From contig RHPI01003516.1 of the NCBI GenBank assembly GCA_009103225.1, positions 24,062-88,061 on the forward strand: a stretch of 64,000 nt of DNA, read 5' to 3'. Below the pieces are notes generated by a model that was not told the origin of the DNA, did not search any database, and saw nothing but the letters and a program-made list of their open reading frames with translations. Shown here in pieces: positions 41,220-56,247 of this stretch. Source of the stretch: Chlorokybus atmophyticus (lineage: Eukaryota > Plantae > Mesostigma and Chlorokybus algae). The first letter of the stretch is position 1. Each line of letters starts with the position of its first letter. Made by a program: the position numbers and the translations under genes.

Positions 41220-43564
41220 CTGAAGTTTATGACGCTAGCCACAATGTTGTTGCAGCTGCATCATGTAACGTCGCATAAAGCAAACATCCGCATGGCTTAA
41301 GCATGCACGAGCAGTTTTGTCTACATATGTCACCTGAAGTTGCTAGTGCAAGCAATGCATAGGACGAGCTGGCTTGTTCGACTCTCCCATCGTACAGGTA
41401 CAGCACGCTTTGACAGAGCCTCGAGCGTTGCTTGGGCTTCACAAAAATCTCCTGCAGGAGCTTGTCCGGACTGTTGCTGTAGCTGATACTAAGAATCACC
41501 GCTCGCATGCGCCCAGAGCAGAGCAAAGCTGAGCTACTACCGCTCCAGGCGACGCACTTGTCGCCGCTGTGGTAATAATGGGAAAGCTCGTGAGCTGACG
41601 GACGGTCATGTCAGTCGAAACGCCCGGGAGAGAGTTTGCCTCTGCGCCGAAGTTGTGAACATCGGCTGCGAGTTGCCGGTGGGTCGGCCCGGCGGTGACA
41701 GGCCAGCCGTTTCTGCTAAGCCTGCGTTGCACCCCATGAGTCAACCGACAGTCGGGCGGATTTCTTGCACGAGCGCCGCCGGCTTGTCGCGTTGTAACGT
41801 TATCGTTATCAACACCTCCAGGTATTGACCTGAACCAACCCGTCCTGTTGATAGCCATGAATGTAAACTTTCGGTTATGTCGTAAAGGCTGGAACTGCAC
41901 GCCCATAATCATCATGGCTTATCATGGCATATACCTGTAGTCGCAGGTAGTATTGTCCTGCTAGTAGAGTGAGTATCGTTCTACGGCGTTATCGTTTAGC
42001 GGCCGCTCGGTAGCAGCAATCAGAGCGCGCCAACGTTGGCGACATGCCCACGCGCCTGCGACCTTAGAATCCGTAGCCGCTGCATGCATGAGCGGCCTGG
42101 AGCAACTTCATAAACGACGACCAGCAGCTGCTGCCACAGTACCAGTGTATAAGTGTAACAATGCCAGTGCATAAGTGTTTTTGCCACCTTTCAGGCAATT
42201 GATATCAAAAAGAGCCCTTCTGGTACTACCACTAATTCATCGGCATGATTCTGCATACTTGGGTACTGATGCAACCACTCCTTGTAAGTGAGCGAGTTTG
42301 AAGCGTGTGTAATATACTCGGAAGCAATCCGACATAGGCCGGCGGCCTCCCCGTCTCCAAAGGGTTGCCTCGCTATGACATGGTCCAGGTTGCTTTACAT
42401 GGCTGGGAGCGAATGACACATGGTTGTCCACAGTCTAGTTGTCGTTCTGTATAATGTGTGCACCATGCGCGGTATAAAGCTGTGAGCTGGGCCTGTGTGC
42501 AAACCCCTGCCCGACATGCCGACCGGGGGCGTCGTCAACAAGGTGTAACTGTGATATTGACCGGACGCTCCAGCCTGACTAACTCTTGAAGGTGAAGTCC
42601 GCGGAGTGCTGTCGCGTCAAGTCTAGCTAGGCCTAAATGCAGCAACACGAGCCTTGTGTAGCCACTGTCACCTGCACACGCAACATGTCACATCACCAGC
42701 GCATCATAATATTGTGAATCAGTTGCACTTTAAGTTGAAGCGTTGTCCCGGTCGTACGTGTGGTTGGTCCATCATGATCTTTGTCATGAGTGCTGATAGT
42801 ATGCGTGCGGGGGAGCAAGCACACACTAGGCATTGTCACTGCCGCCCAGACAGCCTCCTCAGGGCTCGCAGCCTGCTTAGGCACCGTCATCTGTCCCTCA
42901 TTGGCTTCTGTGCTGCCTCCAAGTCAGTCTGTTCACACTTCACTCGCTGATGTCAGCACTAGCAGGCATTGAAAGCCTTGGCCAGCATCGCACACTTAGG
43001 CATACATGCAAGTCACTTGTACACATCATGTAGCCAGATGCTACGCTGGTGGTTGCATCTGCAGAGAACCTTGGTAAACAGTGAGCGGCGTGGCCTCACT
43101 GAGAACTTCCCTCGGTTTGTGCAGGTAGATTGCAAGCTCGGGAAGCGTGTGAGTCTTTGAGCAAGAGCTGGCTGCCGTAGTACTGCGTTGCAGCACAAGG
43201 GTACTTACAGCGCAGTTTGCTGCAACAAAGATCTTGGGGGTCGAGTGCATTAGACGAACTGGCATGCATGAGGCGTTTGATCCGATATGCTGGCTAGCCG
43301 TTTCTTCTCATCTCATGACAATTTATAAGTTGTACATCTGCAAGCTTGAGACCATGTCATTGCTAGCTGAGGTTCATACTGCACACCATGGGGTCGTATT
43401 GTAGTAGTTGACATGGCATATGCCCAGCTTGTTGGCACAGCGGCTGCCATAGCATATTGCATGCTGTCGCATTCATCCTGCAGCCGCCGGTGTAAGACTA
43501 CTAGATCAGCCTGCAAGCTCCATTTAAATGCTTAACACAGCATCATGTCAGCAGTGGTCAGGTC

Positions 43565-45410
43565 ATGACAACATCCTCCATCCGAGTTGTGGTGGCCACT
43601 GCTGTCATTGGGGGCGCCGTTACTGTGGCTGGTGCACTGGTTTTGAAATACTTCAATGAGGCCCAGCTGGCAGCCATGGACCCTTCCAAGCCAGGTATGT
43701 TGGTTGGGCTTGCTTGATTGACAGGGATTACTGCTCCTGTTGATGCTGATTGCGCAAGCGCATTGTGCGATCGTAGGCAGGTGGCCTTATGCACAGCGTG
43801 AGGCGGCCAACCGTAACGGTTTGGAGCTGGGGAACAAGCTCAGAAGTCAGGACTATTTACAAGCAAGAGATGCCATCTTTGCCTTTAAGCATGACTGCGA
43901 AAGCCGCCAGAAATCGTATGCAGATGCCTTCCTCACGGGAGACTGCACATCAGAACAGTACCAGCAGGTGAGCATGCATAGCACTAGCATGCATCTCACC
44001 ATTGACTGCCAGCTTGCAGAAGCTGACCAGCGCTGATGCAATGGTCATAATGTGCGCCTGTATTTATGCAATGCCATTGTTGTGACCGCAGGTGGATGCA
44101 GCGCGCAAGCAAATCTCAGGCATCTGGAGGCAAGCTACCAGAAGTTACAGAGCATGTCAGCTGGCAGACGCTGGCAGCGACATGTTTTCTCGCAACCGCA
44201 GATGGCTTCGCGACAGCAACGAGATGAGGGTGCTAGTAGAACCCATTGATATAGCCAATTGGTACAAGTGCAAGCAGCACCTGCCTGAGAAGGGACCCAA
44301 TGCATACAGTGGACATTACGCAGGTAAGGAAGATGCATGTGTGTGTGCACATGTCTTGGGGATTAGAGTTGCATGCAGGTCATCATGGTGTTTATAGCTA
44401 CCTGTTGTTGGAGCAGATCACATCAGTAAGCCAATCGAAGAGTCCAAGCGGCCGTCTTGGTATGCATTTGTCGAGAGCAAAGCGGAGGCGGAAGGTCTTG
44501 CAGTAGAGAACTCCGTGCAGAAGGCGTTTGAGTATAAGAAGCTGGTGTACGAAGGAAAGCTGGTGTACCAGAGCATTGCAGACGCACGAGCGACGCCTCC
44601 TGTGGGGTTTAAGCGGCTCTCACCTCTGCAGCAACAAGGTGCCACACGCTAGCGCTGGTTGCTCCAGCAGGAAGTGCTTGCACACATGCCATGGGGGGGA
44701 TGATGCTGGAGACTGGCTGACATGCGACCCGTTCGCGCACAGCTGCCACGAGGACAATGGACTGGCAGTACGATGTCTTCATCAGCCATGCTGGCGAAGA
44801 CAAGGAGTTTGCAGACGAGCTGCATCATGACCTGAAGCAGCTGGGCATGAATCCTTTTCTGGACAAGTGTAATCTTGCTGCCGGTGATGCAGCGGATGCC
44901 ATTATGCTTTTTTCTGCAAGAAGAGCTCCCGTGGGTGTGGCAATCATGGGACGCACCTTTTCTGCCAAGACATGGCCAATGAAGGAGTTGTATATTGTGG
45001 TGACTCAGGGCACCCTTCTGCCGGTGGCCCTTGGTATTAGCTATCAGCAGCTTGAGAGCGACCTGCGAGCAAGTCCTCAAAAAAGAACTCTTGGGAAGAC
45101 GGATGAGGAGTGGGAGACCTTTGTCAAACAGGTGGTACGCACTACCATGGTGCTCGACAACAATCAGTATCGAAGGAGATTGCGCGATGAGATTGTGTTC
45201 CACGTGGTGCGAAAGTATGTTGAGATGTGCCCTCAGTTGCCGGACACTAAATGGGGTGCCCGACGCCTTGACACTGCGCTTGCTGCTGTGCGCGGTATCA
45301 ATCCCACCCGCTTTCCAGACCTGCCCGCCGGACAGGTACACGAGGCTCAAAACAAGTGGCTGCCTGGGTTAGAACACATGGTACAAGACAATAGTCACCC
45401 CCGCTCTTAG
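43565..45410 (+). CDS. TM helix + EDS1/PAD4-type EP domain + TIR fusion protein (480 aa model); alternative is a 262-aa EP gene ending 44652 plus a separate TIR gene 44757-45410
   Basis: Exons 43565-43694, 43777-43967, 44092-44323, 44417-44638 and 44743-45410 give an open frame. EP motifs FKHDCE...SYADAF...RKQISGIW...RVLVEPIDIANWYK...GHY...RPSWY. TIR motifs YDVFISHAGEDK...FLD...WPMKEL. Confidence 0.8.
44757..45410 (+). CDS. TIR domain (TIR_2-like), putative catalytic Glu retained
   Basis: YDVFISHAGEDKEFADELHHDLKQLGMNPFLD...SAKTWPMKEL...LLPV. Confidence 0.92.
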   Translation: MDWQYDVFISHAGEDKEFADELHHDLKQLGMNPFLDKCNLAAGDAADAIMLFSARRAPVGVAIMGRTFSAKTWPMKELYIVVTQGTLLPVALGISYQQLESDLRASPQKRTLGKTDEEWETFVKQVVRTTMVLDNNQYRRRLRDEIVFHVVRKYVEMCPQLPDTKWGARRLDTALAAVRGINPTRFPDLPAGQVHEAQNKWLPGLEHMVQDNSHPRS

Positions 45411-47006
45411 CTTGTGTAGTATACATGTTTATAAGCACACGCATGGAATGTATGTTGGTTGCATAAAAACATCAGTCTGACGTGTTCTGCATGTGAGACA
45501 CAATATACGTAACAACACTCAACGAATGCAGTGTGTATATTGTCAACAGATTCAGCAACAAGTACTAAAACATGGGCTGGCGCAAGCTGCTAACATCATA
45601 CAAAAAAACGGCAACATCATCACCATGGTCAGGCGAGCTTGTTGCAGCCTGCACCCCTAGGTCCGCACATCCACATAATCATTAATCATTAAAGCCAAAG
45701 TAAGCATATTGCCCAAAGGGCAAGTGCTCGCTGCGGCTGCGGATATTCTCAGGATAGGAGTTTGACAACGCCTGCAAGTGACACAACTGATTACAATCGA
45801 ACAACTAAGGGTTGTTAGCTTGTTAATGCCGCTTAGCAACTACGAATTTGGCTGAGTTGAAGTAGTATATTTTTTGTATTTACGAACAAAGGTCGCAACA
45901 TACACATACACGCGCACTAGTTACATGCACGGACGCACGCACGCGTGTACACATATGCATATACGTAGGTAGGTAGGTAGGTAGGTAGGGTATGGTAGAT
46001 TGGCTCATAGTATGTAATTACGCAAGTGCGCAAGTATGCAAGTATACAACAGTGTTAATGTGTACTACTCACTTACTTGGAGGTCGGCTTGGCAGATTTA
46101 TGCGCAAGCACAAGGACTGACACATGGAAGTCCTTGTGGATGGATACCATTGGTGCAACATCTGGATGAAGGAATGACCACCACCGCAACGGGAAGGAGA
46201 GGATGGCCGCCAACCTCTCCACTCAGCTTCAGGCACACACACACTCAAGCACATCCCCACACACACGTGCAGAGCTGCCACGGGCACCCCACCCCACTAA
46301 GGATGAGAGGGAGAGCCCCTTTAACACCTAAACTAGGCACCCTACACACAAGACTGAAGTATGCACCTCAAGAGCTGGCCCCACATTTGATGGGACACTC
46401 CTATATACTCCCCCTTGCTGCTCCCCGACCTAGAACACGAATGTCCAAGCCTACATGCACTGGCATTGCTGTGTTGACCGTCATACTTGCCTCGGGGCTG
46501 CCACACATTAGCCTCAGACCTTAATAATGCCTCGGACATTGTGAACGTCCTTAGCTGGTCAGCTGCATAGGCTGACCGTGTAACGGCATCGGTACAGTTT
46601 CAGCATGAGGCGCTGGGTTGTCTCCATCGTCAATAGCGTTTTGTGGGTACCGAGCGCTGCGCTTGCCCGACCAGTGCGCACAATGCAGCTAGCTCGGGTG
46701 GTGCACTGGTGACATGTAAGTCATCGCTGCCAATGGCGTGTGCCTTGCTTGTTGCAACAATCTTAGCTCAACGTGCTTGTTGGCAAACTGAACAGTCACC
46801 GTGAACTGCACGACTTGTTGTCAATCATAGGCGCGTGACTGGTAGCTTTGTATCTGTGTAGCTAGCTCGGCTATTACAGCTGGTTGACATACGGCCAGCG
46901 CTGTTGCCACTTTCAAGCAATCCCCACTGATTTCAGTATTTGACTCTGTGAGCTGAACCGCATTCTACCTACGAAGTAACTACATGTGCACAGAAGGCAG
47001 CCACGC

Positions 47007-48723
47007 ATGCAGCAGCAAACTTCTGCCTTCATCAGCTACTGTCAGAAGGACAAGTCGCATGCGCAATGTGTGCGAAACTTAGCGGACAGATTACAAGCCG
47101 GACGGACTGCGTGTCATTGTGGACTACATGAATGATGGGACAGTGTCGTGGCCTGTCTTTGTCGGACAGATGCTGGAGGACAAGACCAAGGTGCGCACAC
47201 GTAGTCTAGTTGCAACCATTGACCAGCCTCTTGTGACCGCAATTGCACGTATCGTGTGGTGTACTTGAGTTGCTGAGATGCTGGGTGCAGGTCATTGTTG
47301 CCTACGATGAGCACTACAAATACTACTCCCTCAAAGAGCCAGTCTTAGACAACGACATGCTGGGCAGGCGTACTCATGACGAGTACACTAACATCCTTAA
47401 AATGTACGAGCAGCAAAACTTAATGGGCTGGCTGGTGCCAGTAATTTTTAGGCCTCCTGGTGAGAGAAGCCACGTGCCCAGCCAGAGTTAAATTCACTTA
47501 TTACTCCATCAATTAGCAAGACAAGGTCAGAGACAGGGTTTTGACTGTCACTTAAGCTTGCTGACTTGCTAATGAGGAACTATCAGACGGCTTTAGTTGA
47601 CCTAAAGGTGAGCTTCCCCTGATGTCGCGCATGAGCATGCGTGTGCATACGCATTCTGTTTAAGTAGTTATGAGCGGTATTTGATCAACATGGTTGCATG
47701 GTGAACCCTGCTGAATAAGAATACGACGACCTGCTGAGGCACTTGCATAGCATCTCACCGTTTATGACAGCAGCTGGAGCTACTGCCACTACGGGGGCGC
47801 CAGCCAGTGCTGCTCCACACGACAGGTAATGGTTGCTGCAGACCAACAGAAGGTCGTCGACAGATGCAATTGTTTGCACCAGCTGCTTTTGGGATGGCAG
47901 TTACGCAATCTTGTGTTTTAGTCCTTCACCTCGCAGTCCTTCACCTCAACACACTGGCAAGCAAGTTCGTAAGTCCGCTACCAGTGCGTTTCCTGGAAAA
48001 ATTGATGAGAAGGCTATGCATGAGTCGCAGATCTTTAACAGCAGCTGCTCTTGCCAGCTCTTCGTCACAGGCGTACTTGTCAATCAAAGAGCTGTTTGAC
48101 AACGAGGGCACTTTCAACAATCTCTGGAGGGACAACGCTCAACCTGCATTGGACAGGCTTTGAAAGTTTGAAAGAACTTCCTCAGATATCTACGTCAGAT
48201 TTCGCTCTTATAAACAAGATTGCAGCCCTGAAGCGAAGCTCCTGCAGCCTGTAAAAGGGGCGCGCAGGTATGAGCCTATTGTGTTGCTTGCAGCTACCTT
48301 GCACGGGCACACGTCAGTGCACGCATCCACGTTTGCACAGCCTCGTTGTTGCCTATGACCACCCCTTCTCTTCCATTGTGTACTTGCAGGGTGGTTAAAG
48401 ACTTCTGGTACAAGGCGTGGAATTGGTACACAACCGGACTGCTGCCTGTGGATTTTTTTAGCAACAGCAAGCCCTCGGGTGCCAGAGGGAACACCTGCAA
48501 ACTTTTCGCGGAACCCATTGATATTGCGAATTATTACCGCCTGAAGCTGTGGGAGCAGTGGCCGGAAGGCAATCGTCACTACCTGGAGGCGAACAACCGC
48601 CCAGTCCAATACGTGTTTCTGGAACTTCAGTACAAGAAGCACAACCCCTATAGCGTTGCACCCTTGTCAACGGCGCATGCGCTTCGTGAAGCAGACGCGG
48701 TTGAGGCCAGAGCGCATCTGTAG
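47007..48723 (+). pseudogene. SEFIR-like TIR + EP-domain fusion gene with a frameshift and a premature stop
   Basis: Exon 47007-47190 AFISYCQKDKSHAQCVRNLADRLQ[+1 nt at about 47098]DGLRVIVDY; exon 47291-about 47459 VIVAYDEHY...THDEY...LVPVIF; exon 48071-48267 with TGA at 48161; exon 48390-48723 DFW...LPVDF...LFAEPIDIANYYR...HYLEANNRPVQY. Confidence 0.8.
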
Positions 48724-50239: not shown

Positions 50240-53200
50240 TCACTCACTCCAATCATCTGAAGTTCTGAAGGCAAGCCATTTAGTCTGGACATGGCCATTA
50301 AATGCGTAGATACCCAGCTCGTGCGGACGCCTTTCACCTGAGCACTTTACCCACCCACCAGCTATGCGTGGGCCAGGTGTTGCCAGCTGCCTCCAATGCT
50401 TGATGCTGCCAATCTGTGTTGCTGTTTCCTCTACAACATCCAGCGAGCCTGCAATGCACGTCTGTGAGTCCCTAGAATTCCACCATATGGGTGATTCTGT
50501 TATAACCCATCTGGTGGGATGGGTAATCACAGAATATGGGACAGCAATCGGAGATATTCCGGAAGACATCGAGTCCCTCAGCAAGGACCGTTTATGCATC
50601 CACTGGTAAGGGCTCAAGCTACAACTGCTCCCGGGAAACTCTCTTGAGCGAGAATTCATCAAGCCAGTTGCTAAGGGCCGCATCTGTGGCATCTGCTATG
50701 TAGCGCCGCAGCTGCTTGTGCATTGCGTTGATGATGCGACTCGCGGCTTCATCTCAAGCGGGAAGTCTATCCGCTCAACAATGCCAAGGGGTCAGCAGCA
50801 TTCCTTGTGCGCCTGCCATTGATGAGCAAAGAAGAGGCCATGAACAGTGATGACACAACACAGATGAGAGAGCATGATGCTTGTCCTACCCTTGAACTTT
50901 GCCATCCGGAATATTGTGGCAACTCGTCTGAACTTGCTGCTTGCTTTTCGCTCCAACTGCGCTTCTAGCTGCCATACAAGCTTTTTACACTTGTGAAGAT
51001 GCTCAGGCACCTCGACTAAGTTGTTTCCCCAGATTTGCAACTCCTCCAAATGCTGCAACGACTCCAGCTCTGGTAGGTTGTTTAGCTTATTACAATCGAG
51101 CACCAACTTCTTCAACGCTTTCAAGCGATTGACTTCTTGAGGTAGCTCGACCAGGTCGTTTTGTGACACATCTAGCATTTTCAGGTAATGGAGTTCCCAC
51201 AGCTCAATTGGCAATGATGATAAACGAGTGTTGCCTAGAAATAGATAGCGGAGGTCTTTCATCTTGCAAACCTGCAATAAAGAATAAGCTGTTGCGGCAC
51301 AGATTGGGGATTGGGAAGGGGGCCATATGCAATGCACTGAGCGCAGGTGCACTGAGCTGCAGGAGAGATGCGCATTAACTACCAGCTGTTGCTCATATGC
51401 CCGAATCTGCAATGTTGTTCGTCAGTACATGTGCTAGCATCGCACGCCCCTCACTTGCTGTATCAAGCCTTCTGGATTGCAATCGACATCTATTGATCGC
51501 CAATGCTCGAGTTGCGGGAGCTCCATGCTCGGATGGCACGCAACTTGTTGCAGAAGTCAAAACTAAGGTAGACCAGCTTATGCAGAGTTAGACAACCTGT
51601 GGTGGGTACTGTGAGGGACGTCAAGGATGCGCAATAGGAGAGATCCAATATCTGCAACAGTCGCGAGATCAGTGGCATACATGCATGCATGCAGCATACG
51701 CGGGCAGTGAGTGAGCTGCACCTGCAGGTTTTTGAACTTGTTTAAGTCCGGCAGAATGACAAGTCTACCGCAACGTGACAAGATCAGCGTTTGCAGTGAG
51801 GGCAGCTGCACAGAAGCGGAATGATGAGAGGGTTTGAGGTGAGCGGCCATGCATTCCGTTGCAACCGTTCCTGCCATCATACTCTCCGTCTATACGCAAC
51901 TCACTTGGATATGTGCCTTTGCATCCCAGAGGTGCTTGAAGCTACTAACGGACAAGTCCAGCGCACAGAGCTTGTTGTAAACCGCTGCTCTGGTCACTTG
52001 CACGTTGTGCAGCATGTTCACTTGCAATGATACCAAGTGCTGTGCACTGCCCTTCATAATAAGATATGAAGCACGATTCACAGCCAGTAGCCGCAGGCCT
52101 TGGCCGAGGTCATGCGGTACAACAAGGTCGCGCTCTCGTTCAATCTTGATATCCATGAAAACACCCTGCACATCGCACTTGACAGTTAGCCAGCCAGCCT
52201 CAGAACTGATCGAGTGGATGCTATGCCAGTTATTATACTCCTGACATAAACCGCGGCGCTCTGTGACAGCAACACGACGTACATAATAAGGAGCGCAGAT
52301 CTGCACACATTGCGCCGTTTACTAAATAACGTGCAGCAAACCTGCAAAAAGGTTGCGCTGACATCATGTAATGTTGCAGACTTGAGACTTGTACGCTGTT
52401 GCGGCACTGCCAATTGTTTTATGTGCATTCCTAAAGTTATCATCAGATCGTGCATCACCAAAGTTTTGCCGGCGATCTCTGGGTGTTCTTCCACGCTTAT
52501 AAGGGAGCTGTCTTGCAGGCTGCGTAGCGCACCAGGCACTCCCCTGCCAAAATCTGCAAGATCCGCAGGGGTGGTCCAAATGTACACTCCAGCCCGATAA
52601 CCAATAAAAGTGCGTAAGAATGGATAGCACGCCAGGTCTAAGAAAAAAAAAAAAATAAAAAAAAAAATGCATTGCATTCCCTGTCTTGCATGAGGGTCAA
52701 GCTAAACAACAGGATGCTGAAGATGGCATCTTCCTTCTCCCCATGCACACTCTGCACGTCTGTTAGCCACTCCAGGCAGCGCAAAAACTCAGATAAACCT
52801 TTCCTGTGCAGCGCACTTCCAATCACCCGTAGTGCCAGTGGCAATCCATTGCACGCCTCCACCACTATTCTAATGACGGGTGCACACACTCGAGGCAATC
52901 GACTACGCTCAACTGCAGCGTATGCGTGCTCGTGCAGCTTGTCACAAAGGAAAAGGTGACTTTGGTTGAACTTGTCCGTACGAGCGTTGTCAATGATGCT
53001 AGCAAACTCGGCCTGTTCCTTGCGGGTGTGCTGCCGGTATGCATGTCTGCAAAACAGGATGACAGCGTCTAGTGGCTCTAAAGACGACACTTGCACGATT
53101 CCCACATTCTCCGGGTACTCCAGGCACGTGCGCTTCCAGGATGTGAGGATCACCTTGCTGCCTGCAGCCACGGCCACCAGCAACATTTCCGCCTGCAGCT

Positions 53201-54405
53201 TATCTATAATATTGTCAACGACAAGCAAAACTTGCTTGTTTTTTAGGCGTTCTTTTAATAACTGTCATCTATCCTGCAGATCGAGCCCGACTTTGGCATC
53301 GGCAGAGGTCTTACAGAGGGCCTCCAGCATTGCTTGCTGCTGTTCCTCCAGTGACGCGGTGCTCTCTCTTAAATCAAGTGTGATGTAGCAGCTCCTTCCG
53401 CAATAGTCTGCGGCAAAGTGGTTGTACACATGCTTGGCTATGGTAGTCTTGCCCACACCTCGCATGCCAAGCAGTCCCACCACCCTGTGTGTGTTTCCAA
53501 AAGCTTAATAACAGGTGCAGAGCATGCATGGATATCCACAGCCTCAACTTCAGCCACGCGCTTATGAAGTATGCTCAGCTTCTGGCAGACCCTATGGACA
53601 ACTTCTTGAACAAGTTGCAATTTAATCCTGCACATGCAACAATATCAGCAAGCAGCATCTCAAGCGAACGATGATGCGAGGAACTTGAGCACACAGTGTT
53701 CGCAGAACACGGCTAACAGTAGTTTGCTGGCATACAGTCAGGTTCCAGCACCTGAAGCTTCAAGCACTATCAGATGCCGCCAGCTCAGCAGCACGCAAGT
53801 TATACAGACACTGCCAACCAAACTGAGGCGAGTGGAGGCTAGGGTCAGCACTAGTACTGGTGCCCGCAGCCTTCCAAGCCCTTGCTGTGAGAGAGAGGCT
53901 TAGGAGACGGTGCGAGCTGCCCGGGAGAGGGGGGGGGGGGGGGGGGGGGGGNTTCTGCAGCCTGTTATGTCAAAAAGCTTTGCCATAGCTTGTCGCCATT
54001 CACCTCTTTTCTCCTCGTCCATCTGTCGCCCTTCTCTTATTGCTTGCTGCTTGCTCTCGTAAATTCTTAAACCGTTGTATATTTTCTTTCTCTTTATCTT
54101 TTTCTTAGTTTTTGTGACGCTTGTCACTCCAGTAGAACACGGGTACAATGTCTTTGTTTTGGTTAACCGCTTTCACCAGCTGTCAGGCAGTCTATTGACT
54201 CCAAAAACCGCCTTGAGAGGATGACAACGACAACCTGTGCAGCGCTCAAGGCGTCCAACATGCTTCGCTGCGCACTTGGGCTCCCTTTCAGATCGTTGTC
54301 ATCAAGAAAGGGTTTGATATAATAGCTGGTGCGTTGCAGCTCCTTATAGATATACGAGGCGATTGTTGTCTTGGTGTCAGGCCCTCGATGGCATATAAAA
54401 ACATT
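50240..54405 (-). pseudogene. TIR-NB-ARC-LRR (TNL) immune receptor, degraded
   Basis: TIR VFICHRGPDTK...PFLD...VPVFY...WRQAM; P-loop GMRGVGKTT; Walker B LLVVDN; GSKVILTS; CNGLPLAL; FLDLACY; MHD; LRR exons at about 50890-52270. Frameshifts at 54180 and 54131, TGA at 53265, poly-A at 52643-52667. 3' boundary uncertain. Confidence 0.9.
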
Positions 54406-56247
54406 TCACTGCACACACTCAGTCAGCGCTGAACAATAAACAATGCGGCACGCACACATGCACGCATGCACACATGTATATATGTGTGACAGCCATCCAA
54501 GACCTGTCGCGTCAGCGACACCGTGTGACGCCAAAGAGATACCCACACAATGCCCAATCACAAGAGGAAGCATCAGCGAGCTTACGGCGGGTGCCGGCGT
54601 CCTTGATTGAATTGTCACTGCCAGGAACTTCAGCAAGTGCGCTGACGGATTCCCTTGAAGTCATTACTGCGGATGGTAAGCGGGCTAAGCAGAGAACGAC
54701 GTGGTATTGCCCTCAGCTGCACTGCTGCTTCTGCACGCATCAACCCTGCAATGAGTGTGTGAAGAGGCGAGTGCCGAGATGAAGTCCAACTACCCTCACA
54801 TGCGATATGGGCGTATGCAAGGCATCTGTTAGTGGTCATCTATAATGTCTGGCCGGCTGCATGCATGCAAGATTGATATGCGATACACGGTATGCACGTA
54901 TGCAATTGCAAGGCATTTGTTGGGGGGCGTCTGATCATATCTGGCCGTCTGCGTGCATGTAAGATCGCATTGTACGTTTACTGAAAGAACGGATGTGACC
55001 GCAACCGTGCAGGTCGTTAGCATTGAGAAACGCAGCACTGTGATAGCTTGGGAATGCAAGTTGTCCGCATAGTCATTGTGGTAGGTGTGCGCATTGAGCT
55101 AAGGCAGGCAGGAAAGCTGTGCCAGGGCAGTGGCCTGTCACAAGTACACTGTGCAATCTGGCATGGCAAGTACGTACAGCTGCTAGGCAACGACAACCTC
55201 ACGCCCGCCGCTGCCTACCCACAGCAGCAAGGAGTGTGAGCCTCGCTGAGGTGCAGGAGCGACGCTGGACTGGCGGAAGAAGTAATCGCAAGAAGCACTG
55301 CCCAGCCGCTGGGCGTGGGGCGCACCGGGGGAGGCAGCAGTAGCAGCAGCATCCCAATCCTGGTCGGGACAGTGGCCAGCGCGGCACAATTACTGATGCC
55401 ATTGGGTACATATTCTGGGCTCCTGAAGTTCCTCCGACCCTTTGCCTCTGGGGTCGTACCACCAACTCAAATGTGCTCGCAGTTGGTCGGTGGTGCGAGA
55501 GGAACTGCTGGCGATGGCGTCGGCGGCGAGCAATGTCGAGGGCGAGGGCGCGGGCGCGGGCTCGAGAGTAGCTCAACATGCACCCGACGCTGGCAGCCAT
55601 CTTTGCCCTGCAGCTCGCTTTGCTGCTACTGCTTCCAGCAAGCAAAATTAGTGATCCCATGTGTGCCCGGTGCTTGTGTCGTCTGTGACTCTCGCTAGGC
55701 GGAGCAGTACGAGCCTGGCTTGAGGAACAACGCTTGATATGAATACGTCATATTAAGGTTTAGTTCCCTTTATGACAGCTATCTTGAGTGGGCCAATCAC
55801 TCGATTGCACAAGTTTATTGTCAACAACGACATTCATGCATTCGACATGCCCAATAGTTCGCGTATGCTTCTGCCGTTGTGATGCTTCCATGAAAGCCGC
55901 TGCGAGACAAATTTCGTTGTGGCTAAGTGCTCCCTGCGAGCAGCTTGACGGAGATGACGCGTTACGGTCAGAACACCGCAGTACCAGCAGCTATTGTTGG
56001 CGTTGCATGTGTACTCCAGCGTTGCGCCGTAGCTGGCGTTCACCTGGAATGCGACCTGGCGTTAAGTTTGCTGGCGTATTCTCCTTGAGTTTGCATCTGT
56101 AGATGGCCTGACTTCTATCGCGGCGAACATGTTTACAGTTGCAATTACATTGTTGCGTGTTTTCATGACGACATGCAAGCACCAATGGCCTGACCACATG
56201 CTTACAGAGTTCATGAGCATAATCTGGGTCATGATTCATGCCCTCGT

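What the first reader, a model, noticed from the sequence alone, without database searches (positions are those of the whole stretch)
43565..45410. Lipase-less EDS1/PAD4-type EP domain fused to an intact TIR domain
Seen: four exons encode FKHDCE..SYADAF..RKQISGIW..WLRDSNEMRVLVEPIDIANWYK..GHY..RPSWY. A phase-1 GT at 44639 and an AG at 44742 (CTGAC branch-like site upstream) join this in frame to a TIR with the WxxKEL glutamate, giving 480 aa with no stops. Established: this motif series matches the EP domain of EDS1/PAD4/SAG101 (recalled consensus YK..C..GYYD.FK..R..LA.FW..W...Y..LVEPLDIANYYR..GHY..RP.RY). That domain is normally fused to a lipase-like domain, is regarded as seed-plant specific, and binds TIR-derived nucleotides. 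Inference: a Rosetta-stone fusion suggesting TIR-to-EP signalling predates seed plants and the lipase fusion.
Basis: partly seen in the sequence, partly recalled or inferred. Interest (0 to 1): 0.95.

Follow-up and report, generated by a model that had tools for sequence, protein, structure and literature searches.

The report
Algal EDS1-type EP domain fused to TIR
A streptophyte alga (Chlorokybus) expresses one 480-residue protein that joins a membrane anchor, an EDS1/PAD4-type EP domain without the lipase part, and an intact TIR enzyme domain, so a domain held to be seed-plant specific is old, and in algae it is physically coupled to TIR.

Summary
The five coding exons at 43565-45410 give a 480-aa ORF. 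All four GT..AG introns, including the critical 44639-44742 one, are spliced out in RNA contigs; the last intron is seen in three runs. One contig runs from exon 2 to a poly(A) tail at 45469.

Residues about 47-232 are a true EP domain:
- Pfam EDS1_EP scores 37.9 bits against a cut-off of 23.1.
- An algae-only profile hits only EDS1, PAD4 and SAG101 in the PDB (AtPAD4 E 9e-21).
- The AlphaFold model (pLDDT 90) matches EDS1/PAD4 at Z 14-17.5, against 5.9 for the best unrelated chain.

Residues 259-480 are an intact TIR that keeps the catalytic Glu (E340).

The organism is Chlorokybus atmophyticus. The public gene model wrongly joins this gene to its neighbour. Colinear EP-TIR orthologues exist in the chlorophyte [Myrmecia] bisecta (43% identity) and in two kinds of environmental contig.

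- Nucleotide binding is untested, and the equivalents of EDS1 R493, K478 and H476 are not conserved.
- An environmental contig carries a candidate lipase-EP gene beside an EP-TIR gene, so "before the lipase fusion" is doubtful.
- A 2026 preprint says short EP-like sequences were reported in green algae, and UniRef already names the Myrmecia protein as EP-containing. I found no description of the fusion.

The parts
43172..43200 (+). 3' end of a non-coding 5' UTR exon; its upstream limit is unknown
   Evidence: A loose end of 29 letters on an X2 contig, placed before 43554, equals window 43172-43200. The spliced UTR carries an in-frame TAG upstream of the ATG, read directly from the sequence.
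43201..43554 (+). 5' UTR intron (GT..AG), spliced in one X2 contig and retained in another
   Evidence: X2 record 4 joins the UTR exon to about 43555. X2 record 3 runs unbroken across 43300-43583.
43565..43694 (+). Coding exon 1: start ATG and an N-terminal hydrophobic helix (residues 8-26), a predicted membrane anchor
   Evidence: The Kyte-Doolittle 19-residue window peaks at 2.32 at residue 8, and this is the only segment above 1.6. The intron 43695-43776 is spliced in X2.
43777..43967 (+). Coding exon 2: start of the EP domain (FKHDCE, SYADAF; helices 1-3)
   Evidence: The AtEDS1 394-425 region aligns here.
44092..44323 (+). Coding exon 3: EP core, including EPIDIANWY (44239-44265) and GHY
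   Evidence: Alone it scores 27.5 bits on Pfam EDS1_EP, above the 23.1 cut-off. All 13 PDB hits with E<=10 are EDS1, PAD4 or SAG101.
44417..44638 (+). Coding exon 4: RPSWY, the last EP helices and the PPVGF linker
   Evidence: PPxGF is conserved in all EP-TIR orthologues.
44639..44742 (+). Phase-1 intron between EP and TIR, with an in-frame TAG at 44650-44652 if retained
   Evidence: The joint that skips these 104 bases is seen in contigs of X1, X2 and X5, and depth inside the intron is 0.
44743..45410 (+). Coding exon 5: TIR domain with a C-terminal helical extension. FISHAGEDK is present; the catalytic Glu E340 is at 44985-44987 within WPMKEL; the stop TAG is at 45408-45410
   Evidence: Pfam TIR_2 48-50 bits and TIR 28-29 bits. 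PDB sequence hits are TIR domains. The AF2 model has pLDDT 89.1 and its top Foldseek hits are RUN1, RPV1, SNC1 and RPP1 TIRs.
45411..45469 (+). 3' UTR up to the poly(A) site
   Evidence: The X1 contig ends with 22 A after 45469. This contradicts the public 640-aa model, which splices on from 45336 into the next gene.
47007..48723 (+). Context: neighbouring gene 2, SEFIR/TIR-like N-terminus plus a second EP domain (EPIDIANYY, RPVQY)
   Evidence: Its full-length Chlorokybus paralogue P0003 has SEFIR at 41 bits and EDS1_EP at 39.6 bits. The exon structure here was not verified with RNA.
50792..54411 (-). Context: neighbouring TIR-NB-ARC-LRR gene (contains an assembly gap)
   Evidence: NB-ARC and LRR Pfam hits. 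The TIR matches gene 1's TIR at 54205-54411.

Best explanation
SHOWN.
- The locus is one expressed Chlorokybus atmophyticus gene for a 480-aa protein.
- The protein has three parts: (i) an N-terminal hydrophobic anchor (residues 8-26); (ii) a lipase-less EP domain of the EDS1/PAD4/SAG101 type (about residues 47-232), shorter than the seed-plant domain at its C-terminal end; (iii) an intact TIR domain (259-480) that keeps the catalytic glutamate (E340).
- It belongs to a well-supported clade of colinear EP-TIR proteins found in a streptophyte alga, in a chlorophyte alga and in environmental contigs.
- It sits about 1.6 kb from a SEFIR-EP gene and 5.4 kb from a TIR-NB-ARC-LRR gene.

INFERRED mechanism (about 40% likely).
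- The TIR domain is an NAD+-consuming enzyme.
- The EP domain is its regulatory and partnering module. As in EDS1-PAD4, two EP domains (a homodimer, or a heterodimer with one of the many TM-EP or SEFIR-EP paralogues) would form a pocket for a ribosyl-nucleotide.
- Ligand binding or EP-EP pairing at a membrane would bring TIR domains together and switch on or amplify NADase signalling. This is comparable to the nucleotide-binding ARM domain that controls the TIR of SARM1.
- Gene 1 keeps the phospho-ribose-contacting D, N and aromatic residues of the EPxDIAN(Y/W) motif, the R425 equivalent and PAD4-like basic residues (R143/R144).
- It lacks the EDS1 R493 and K478 equivalents. The TM-EP paralogues keep the R493 equivalent. 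That pattern fits a division of labour between paralogues.
For: - Gene structure and expression.
- EP identity by sequence. Pfam gives 37.9 bits and E 2e-9. Exon 3 or the EP region alone hits only the EDS1 family in the PDB. The algae-only profile A4 gives AtPAD4 8.8e-21, OsEDS1 2.9e-20, AtEDS1 1.8e-12 and SAG101 4.7e-12, with nothing else at E<=1.
- EP identity by structure. The AF2 model has pLDDT 90.1. The top 20 Foldseek hits are all EDS1 or PAD4 chains. VIA-align gives Z 14-17.5 with rmsd 2.0-3.0 over 153-171 residues, against 5.9 for the next fold.
- TIR.
- Organism and public model.
- Orthologues. P0111 is 43% identical over 440 aa. P0057 is a second Myrmecia copy. L001 and L002/L003 have EP exons followed by TIR exons on the same strand, with WPMREL kept. 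The EP-TIR clade has 97/96 support.
- Pocket residues are taken from the Huang et al. preprint and Bhandari et al., and mapped with the alignments.
- Paralogue architectures (TM-EP, TM-SEFIR-EP, LRR-SEFIR-EP).
Against: - There are no biochemical data.
- The EDS1 residues essential for pRib-ADP/ADPr-ATP signalling are not conserved in this clade: R493 is W199, K478 is Q169 and H476 is C167. PAD4 Y383 and F387 are R and E.
- The part matching the last ~60 residues of the EDS1 EP domain (561-623) is absent.
- The lipase-like domains, which drive EDS1 heterodimerisation, are missing, so EP-EP pairing is only assumed.
- The R314 equivalence (R74) rests on a chained alignment.
- The Myrmecia models lack the N-terminal anchor, which may be an annotation gap.
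- One Myrmecia paralogue (P0057) has Asp in place of the catalytic Glu.
- The RNA runs are labelled 'RNA?' and are assembler contigs, which drop rare isoforms.
- The AF2 alignment included five seed-plant EDS1 rows, so the structural match is not independent of the sequence homology.
Confidence: 0.6

Rival explanations
1. The EP domain here is only a helical scaffold or oligomerisation/localisation module for a TIR enzyme. It binds no nucleotide, and ligand sensing by EP domains arose later, in the seed-plant EDS1 family.
For: The key EDS1 ligand residues R493, K478 and H476 and PAD4 Y383 and F387 are not conserved. The C-terminal third of the EP domain is missing. Close TIR relatives exist without any EP exon upstream in L007-L010, so the TIR can work without it.
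Against: The most conserved block of the whole algal family is EPxDIAN(W/Y)Y. In EDS1 this block supplies D469, N472 and Y473, which contact the phospho-ribose and adenine. The R425 and K440 equivalents are kept. Many paralogues keep the R493 equivalent. EP is repeatedly joined to TIR or SEFIR modules.
Confidence: 0.3
2. Two separate genes: an EP gene that ends at TAG 44650-44652 and a TIR-only gene that starts at ATG 44757.
For: Both ORFs exist mechanically, and TIR-only relatives exist elsewhere.
Against: Contigs from three RNA runs skip exactly 44639-44742, and none covers the intron. Colinear single-protein orthologues are annotated in Myrmecia. The PPxGF linker and the same EP-then-TIR order are conserved in L001-L003.
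Confidence: 0.03
3. The public 640-aa model (Chrsp5S06985) is right: one EP-TIR-SEFIR-EP protein made by splicing from 45336 into the next gene.
For: That model is in the protein collections. Contigs can drop rare isoforms.
Against: RNA contigs read through 45336 to the stop at 45408 and end in poly(A) at 45469. The model keeps only fragments of gene 2's SEFIR domain. The orthologues end where gene 1 ends.
Confidence: 0.04
4. The gene reached Chlorokybus, or the chlorophytes, by horizontal transfer or is a contaminant. In that case it says nothing about the ancestral green lineage.
For: Named occurrences are patchy (Chlorokybus and Myrmecia only). The tree is unrooted and deep nodes are weak. 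By sequence, the TIR is closest to bacterial TIRs.
Against: The gene has spliceosomal introns and a poly(A) tail, and it is expressed in two independent studies of the same species. At least 9 EP proteins in three clades are annotated in Chlorokybus. Within the EP-TIR clade Chlorokybus is sister to the Myrmecia plus environmental sequences, as vertical descent predicts. Identity to seed-plant EP is only about 20-25%.
Confidence: 0.1

Closest known systems
EDS1 / PAD4 / SAG101 family of seed plants (lipase-like domain + EP domain, Pfam PF18117)
   Same: It has the same EP helical fold (Z 14-17.5 over EDS1 361-560 and PAD4 295-464). It shares the signature YxDxF, FW, LVEPxDIAN(Y/W)Y, GHY and RPxxY. 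The equivalents of EDS1 R425, K440, E466, D469 and N472 are kept. It is functionally associated with TIR domains.
   Different: - It has no lipase-like domain and therefore no LLIF dimerisation helix.
- It has an N-terminal membrane anchor instead.
- The EP domain lacks the last ~60-75 residues.
- The R493, K478 and H476 equivalents are W, Q and C.
- It is covalently fused to a TIR.
- It occurs in algae rather than seed plants.
Plant TIR-only and TNL TIR domains (RUN1, RPV1, SNC1, RPP1, L6) and bacterial TIR NADases (AbTIR, BtpA/TcpB, PdTIR)
   Same: It has the TIR fold, the FISH(A)xEDK beta-A motif and the catalytic Glu in W-x-x-x-E-L. Its best structural matches are plant TIRs (TM by target 0.63-0.69).
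   Different: Sequence identity is higher to bacterial TIRs (26-28%) than to plant TNL TIRs (14-21%). It carries a conserved C-terminal helical extension. It follows an EP domain instead of preceding an NB-ARC.
SARM1 (ARM-SAM-TIR)
   Same: The proposed working principle is the same: a helical domain N-terminal to a TIR NADase, thought to bind a nucleotide, that would gate TIR assembly.
   Different: The regulatory domains are not homologous. The SARM1 mechanism is demonstrated, whereas here it is inference only.
Bacterial Thoeris and related TIR systems (TIR signal maker plus a separate sensor-effector)
   Same: The logic of a TIR-made nucleotide read by a dedicated sensor domain is the same. 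The TM-EP paralogues in Chlorokybus resemble sensor-plus-membrane effectors.
   Different: Here the presumed sensor domain and the TIR are in one polypeptide. The EP domain is unrelated to SLOG or Macro sensors.

Membership tests
EDS1/PAD4/SAG101 (EP-domain family) | EP domain recognised by Pfam PF18117 above its gathering score | tested here: met
   37.9 bits against a cut-off of 23.1, E 2e-9, residues 80-177 matching profile positions 6-91 of 211. Exon 3 alone gives 27.5 bits.
EDS1/PAD4/SAG101 (EP-domain family) | EP helical-bundle fold | tested here: met
   The AF2 model has pLDDT 90.1. VIA-align gives Z 17.5 to EDS1 and 16.0 to PAD4, against 5.9 for the next unrelated chain. The caveat is that the alignment held seed-plant rows.
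EDS1/PAD4/SAG101 (EP-domain family) | N-terminal lipase-like alpha/beta-hydrolase domain with the dimerisation helix | tested here: not met
   Only 46 residues precede the EP domain, and they form a hydrophobic anchor. There is an in-frame stop in the 5' UTR. No Lipase_3 hit was found.
EDS1/PAD4/SAG101 (EP-domain family) | Complete EP domain, including the C-terminal helices (AtEDS1 561-623) | tested here: not met
   The structural and profile alignments end at EDS1 about 560 and PAD4 about 465. The TIR linker follows directly.
EDS1/PAD4/SAG101 (EP-domain family) | Basic and aromatic pocket residues that bind pRib-ADP/ADPr-ATP (EDS1 R425, D469, N472, Y473, K478, R493, H476; PAD4 R314, K379/K380, Y383, F387) | tested here: inconclusive
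   Kept: R112 (R425), D160, N163, W164 in place of Y473, and R143/R144 (K379/K380). Changed: Q169 (K478), W199 (R493), C167 (H476), R147 (Y383) and E151 (F387). The R74 = R314 equivalence is tentative. The mapping uses.
EDS1/PAD4/SAG101 (EP-domain family) | Binding of TIR-derived nucleotides and recruitment of an RPW8-type helper NLR | not testable with these tools
   This needs biochemistry.
TIR domain NADases | TIR domain by profile and by fold | tested here: met
   TIR_2 scores 48.2 bits (cut-off 28) and TIR scores 28.2 bits (cut-off 21.3). The AF2 model has pLDDT 89.1, and 59 PDB matches have E<=1e-3; all of the 50 best listed are TIR-domain chains.
TIR domain NADases | Catalytic glutamate in the alpha-C helix (W-x-x-x-E) | tested here: met
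   E340 in WPMKEL aligns with the Glu-containing motif (W-P-x-x-E-L) of the BtpA and AbTIR TIR domains. That column is conserved in 13 of 14 family rows.
TIR domain NADases | NAD+ cleavage activity | not testable with these tools
   An enzyme assay is needed.

The most novel reading that the evidence does not exclude
EP domains are the ancestral green-lineage readers of TIR-made nucleotides. Algae would run a membrane-tethered network of EP-TIR, SEFIR-EP and TM-EP proteins together with TNLs, and the seed-plant EDS1-PAD4-SAG101 node would be one surviving, lipase-fused branch of it. In addition, the lipase-EP (EDS1-like) architecture itself already exists in green algae, as the candidate gene on environmental contig L001 suggests. 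The EDS1 family would then predate land plants and would have been lost in bryophytes, lycophytes and ferns.
Probability: 0.3. Interest if true: 0.95.

Novelty: new variant of a known kind. Interest (0 to 1): 0.8.

Why it matters
Current reviews and a 2026 preprint state that EDS1 signalling is a derived trait of seed plants. They also say that how TIR and TNL proteins signal in algae, bryophytes and ferns is unknown.

This locus shows a robust EP domain, supported by both structure and profile, in an early-diverging streptophyte alga and in a chlorophyte. The domain is transcribed as one protein with a catalytically intact-looking TIR, and the gene lies next to a TNL and a SEFIR-EP gene.

That gives a concrete, clonable candidate for the missing TIR decoding module of non-seed plants. 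The alternative, that EP began as a TIR-associated scaffold and only later became a nucleotide receptor, would be equally informative.

It also corrects a public gene model that merges two genes. The alignment A4 can serve as an algal EP profile for surveys.

Tried and rejected
- The ESM Atlas feature search with exon 3 gave only unrelated low-score clusters.
- Word-index searches with gene 1 and with P0057 found almost nothing beyond the queries themselves. They did find P0111 and a few TIR-only proteins.
- Four of its hits (P0005, P0046 from Tetrahymena, P0050 and P0067) are repeat proteins that add up many weak matches. I discarded them.
- I did not run a full-length AlphaFold model. MAFFT put TIR-only rows onto the EP region and EP rows onto the TIR region, so the two domains were modelled separately. 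I therefore make no statement about an EP-TIR interface.
- Loci L007-L010, the closest TIR relatives, have no detectable EP exon upstream, so not every TIR of this type is fused.
- L004/L005 (P0047, EP 150 bits, GC 43%) looks like a land-plant EDS1-family gene and was not pursued.
- I could not name the organisms behind L001-L003.
- The reference list of the 2026 preprint is not held, and the Lapin et al. 2020 review, which I expected might be among its sources, could not be read. I therefore could not see exactly what 'short EP-like sequences in green algae' refers to.
- Searches for Chlorokybus with EDS1, for PF18117 and for EP-like sequences in algae found no paper that describes an algal EP-TIR protein.
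Full report
**1. What is in the sequence**

The region 43565-45410 on the + strand holds five coding exons: 43565-43694, 43777-43967, 44092-44323, 44417-44638 and 44743-45410. They join in frame to a 1443-nt ORF of 480 codons plus TAG.
- the quoted motifs;
- the phase-1 GT at 44639 and the AG at 44741-44742;
- a CTGAC upstream of the acceptor;
- an in-frame TAG at 44650-44652 that would end the protein if the intron were kept.

**2. Is the fusion transcribed?**

Two runs of the same species from different studies hold about 70% of the sampled words of the locus, as expected for a spliced mRNA. Their contigs, laid on the window, show all four introns removed with GT..AG ends.
- The EP/TIR joint, which skips 104 bases, is seen in three runs (X1, X2, X5).
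- No contig covers the intron.
- One 1408-nt contig runs from exon 2 through exon 5 and ends in 22 A after 45469.
- A further contig shows a 5' UTR intron (43201-43554). In the spliced UTR a TAG lies in frame upstream of the ATG at 43565, so no upstream coding exon, and in particular no lipase exon, is missing.

Caveats: the runs are labelled 'RNA?', and assembler contigs drop rare isoforms.

**3. Organism and public model**

A profile search of 1.84 billion representative proteins returned P0001, which is Chlorokybus atmophyticus protein jgi/Chlat1/6701 (Chrsp5S06985).
- Its first 456 residues are identical to my spliced product.
- It then jumps from a donor at 45336 into pieces of the next gene, giving a 640-aa EP-TIR-(SEFIR fragments)-EP chimera.
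- The RNA contigs read through that donor to the stop and the poly(A) site, so the public model merges two genes.

I used P0001:1-456 as the reference for gene 1.

**4. The EP domain is real**

Sequence evidence:
- Pfam EDS1_EP scores 37.9 bits (gathering cut-off 23.1, E 2e-9) on the spliced protein and 27.5 bits on exon 3 alone.
- Against all PDB sequences, exon 3 alone finds 13 chains at E<=10, and every one is EDS1, PAD4 or SAG101. The whole EP region finds only EDS1 and PAD4.
- A profile built only from algal sequences (13 rows: Chlorokybus, Myrmecia and two environmental contigs) again hits only this family. The E-values are AtPAD4 8.8e-21 (residues 297-465), rice EDS1 2.9e-20, AtEDS1 1.8e-12 and SAG101 4.7e-12.
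- In the 1.84-billion-protein library the two-row profile reached seed-plant EDS1 proteins from Taxus and Ginkgo at E 1e-5 to 1e-6.

Structure evidence:
- AlphaFold2 on residues 40-262 with 80 aligned homologues gave an all-helical model with mean pLDDT 90.1 and pTM 0.84.
- The 20 best Foldseek matches in the PDB are all EDS1 or PAD4 chains. The E-value then jumps from 6e-3 to 0.6.
- VIA-align gives Z 14-17.5 and rmsd 2.0-3.0 Å over 153-171 residues, covering EDS1 361-560 and PAD4 295-464. The best unrelated chain scores Z 5.9.
- In AlphaFold DB clusters the top matches are again seed-plant EDS1-family proteins.
- The model is not fully independent of the sequence homology, because five seed-plant rows were in the alignment.

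**5. How it differs from seed-plant EP domains**

- The alignments stop at about EDS1 560 and PAD4 465, so the last 60-75 residues of the seed-plant domain have no counterpart. In gene 1 the conserved PPVGF linker and the TIR follow directly.
- I took the pRib-ADP/ADPr-ATP contacts from the Huang et al. and Jia et al. preprints and from Bhandari et al..
  - Kept: R112 (EDS1 R425), R127 (K440), E157 (E466), D160 (D469) and N163 (N472).
  - Conservatively changed: W164 for Y473.
  - Changed: Q169 for K478, C167 for H476 and W199 for R493.
  - On the PAD4 side, K379/K380/W381 correspond to R143/R144/W145, but Y383 and F387 are R and E.
  - PAD4 R314 (SAG101 M304) may correspond to R74. That rests on a chained alignment and is tentative.
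- The R493 column splits the paralogues. The TM-EP proteins of Chlorokybus (P0021, P0061, P0063, P0076), P0029 and Myrmecia P0069 keep Arg. The EP domains fused to TIR or SEFIR do not.

**6. The TIR domain is intact**

- Pfam TIR_2 scores 48-50 bits and TIR 28-29 bits.
- The closest solved sequences are bacterial TIR domains, including BtpA/TcpB, AbTIR and PdTIR (E 1e-9 to 2.5e-7). Plant TNL TIRs follow at about 1e-3.
- E340 in WPMKEL is the catalytic glutamate position. It is kept in 13 of 14 family members aligned.
- An AlphaFold model of residues 250-456 has pLDDT 89.1. Its best structural matches are plant TIR domains: RUN1, RPV1, SNC1, RPP1, L6/L7 and RPS4.
- A conserved helical extension follows the TIR core.

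**7. N-terminus**

Residues 8-26 are the only strongly hydrophobic segment (Kyte-Doolittle 19-residue mean 2.32). Most other Chlorokybus EP proteins also begin with such a helix. I read it as a membrane anchor. Its topology is not determined.

**8. Relatives and conservation of the fusion**

- [Myrmecia] bisecta (Trebouxiophyceae) encodes P0111 (WJX72_007249, 451 aa). It is 43% identical to gene 1 over 440 colinear residues and has RPSQY, PPRGF, FISHAGEDK and WPMREL.
- A second Myrmecia copy, P0057 (505 aa), has Asp at the catalytic position.
- Two kinds of environmental contig carry an EP ORF followed within 140-240 bases by TIR ORFs on the same strand. These are L001 (ENA ERZ22854972) and L002/L003 (two JGI metagenomes). 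They match gene 1 colinearly and keep WPMREL.
- In a maximum-likelihood tree these five EP domains form one clade (97/96 support), with Chlorokybus as sister to the rest. Seed-plant EDS1 proteins form a separate clade. Chlorokybus EP domains fall into at least three clades: EP-TIR, SEFIR-EP and TM-EP.
- The nearest TIR relatives in four other contigs have no detectable EP exon.

So the fusion is a single, old event that is kept on both sides of the chlorophyte/streptophyte split. Horizontal spread cannot be excluded with an unrooted tree.

**9. Genomic context**

- 1.6 kb downstream lies a second EP gene with a SEFIR/TIR-like N-terminus (47007-48723).
- A TIR-NB-ARC-LRR gene lies on the other strand at 50792-54411.
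- First-stage notes list further lipase-less EP genes elsewhere in this genome. I confirmed such architectures in annotated Chlorokybus proteins: TM-SEFIR-EP (P0003), LRR-SEFIR-EP (P0004) and TM-EP (P0021, P0061, P0063).

**10. What is already known**

- Papers held in the library state that the EDS1 family and EP proteins occur only in seed plants.
- UniRef already names the Myrmecia proteins 'EDS1 EP domain-containing protein' and 'TIR domain-containing protein', and precomputed Pfam hits for P0001 list PF18117 with the TIR families.
- I found no paper that describes an algal EP-TIR protein. Subscription literature is not covered.

The existence of EP-like sequence in algae is therefore not new. 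The new parts are the demonstration that it is a bona fide EP fold, its transcribed fusion to TIR, and the conservation of that fusion.

**11. Mechanism**

Shown: one mRNA and three modules. The catalytic residue is present, and the pocket motif is partly conserved.

Inferred, at about 40%: the EP domain is the regulatory and partnering module of a membrane-tethered TIR NADase. It would pair with another EP domain to form a nucleotide pocket as in EDS1-PAD4, and so gate or amplify TIR assembly.

The main rival, at about 30%, is a nucleotide-independent scaffold role. Both can be tested with the assays listed under next steps.

**12. A side observation that bears on the interpretation**

On L001, head to head with the EP-TIR gene, the minus strand carries Lipase_3 ORFs followed by an EP ORF.
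- The Lipase_3 ORFs score 49 and 28 bits. They contain GHSLGG and a PLVGD...HDIVPR block that is 47-57% identical to gymnosperm EDS1.
- The EP ORF scores 48 bits and hits AtPAD4 at E 1.2e-10.
- Four seed-plant EDS1 proteins map colinearly over their residues about 15-525.
- The contig has 50% GC, like the algal loci.
- Its EP groups with the Chlorokybus SEFIR-EP clade rather than with seed-plant EDS1.

If the contig is algal and the ORFs are one gene, the lipase-EP architecture is not a seed-plant invention.

Noticed in passing
L001:88-3375 (minus strand), ENA ERZ22854972 NODE_514: This is a candidate EDS1-like gene (Lipase_3 with GHSLGG and PLVGD...HDIVPR, then an EP domain closest to PAD4). 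It is colinear with seed-plant EDS1 residues about 15-525 and lies head to head with an EP-TIR gene on an environmental contig of 50% GC. If the contig is algal, the lipase-EP architecture predates seed plants. The organism is unknown and the single-transcript status is unverified.
   Followed up: partly
window 45336-47100 and protein P0001: The public Chlorokybus model Chrsp5S06985 (640 aa) merges gene 1 with fragments of the next gene. RNA contigs instead show a stop at 45408 and poly(A) at 45469.
   Followed up: yes
window 47007-48723 (+): This is a second EP gene with a SEFIR/TIR-like N-terminus (FISYCQKD..., EPIDIANYY, RPVQY). Its full-length paralogue P0003 has TM-SEFIR-EP, and P0004 has LRR-SEFIR-EP. 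The exon structure here was not checked with RNA.
   Followed up: partly
window 50792-54411 (-): A TIR-NB-ARC-LRR gene sits next to the two EP genes, and an assembly gap (run of N) lies near 53950. Its TIR exon reads ...FLESIDCLTAGE at the position of the W-x-x-x-E motif.
   Followed up: partly
alignment A3/A4, column of AtEDS1 R493: The Arg equivalent to EDS1 R493 is kept in the TM-EP proteins (RPRRY) and in P0029 and P0069. It is replaced (W, Q, T, Y) in EP domains fused to TIR or SEFIR. Conversely, SEFIR-EP and TM-EP proteins have Met where PAD4 has R314 and SAG101 has M304, while gene 1 has Arg. This may reflect EDS1-like and partner-like roles among algal paralogues.
   Followed up: partly
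AlphaFold DB cluster hits of model m0a860d9bddcc: Below the EDS1-family hits there are weak structural matches. These are a Perkinsus 'transmembrane protein' (C5KH53), other unnamed or uncharacterised proteins (e.g. A0A1D3CUH7, A0A7S0DJB3) and bacterial DUF4760 proteins (probability 0.69-0.97, TM 0.43-0.57). They may point to a wider, older TM-plus-helical-bundle family.
   Followed up: no
window 43300-43583: Two 5' UTR forms are present in run X2. One has intron 43201-43554 removed and one is unspliced.
   Followed up: no
L007-L010: These are close TIR relatives (35-46% identity, same C-terminal helical extension) in environmental contigs, with no EP exon detectable upstream. This TIR type therefore also exists unfused.
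   Followed up: partly
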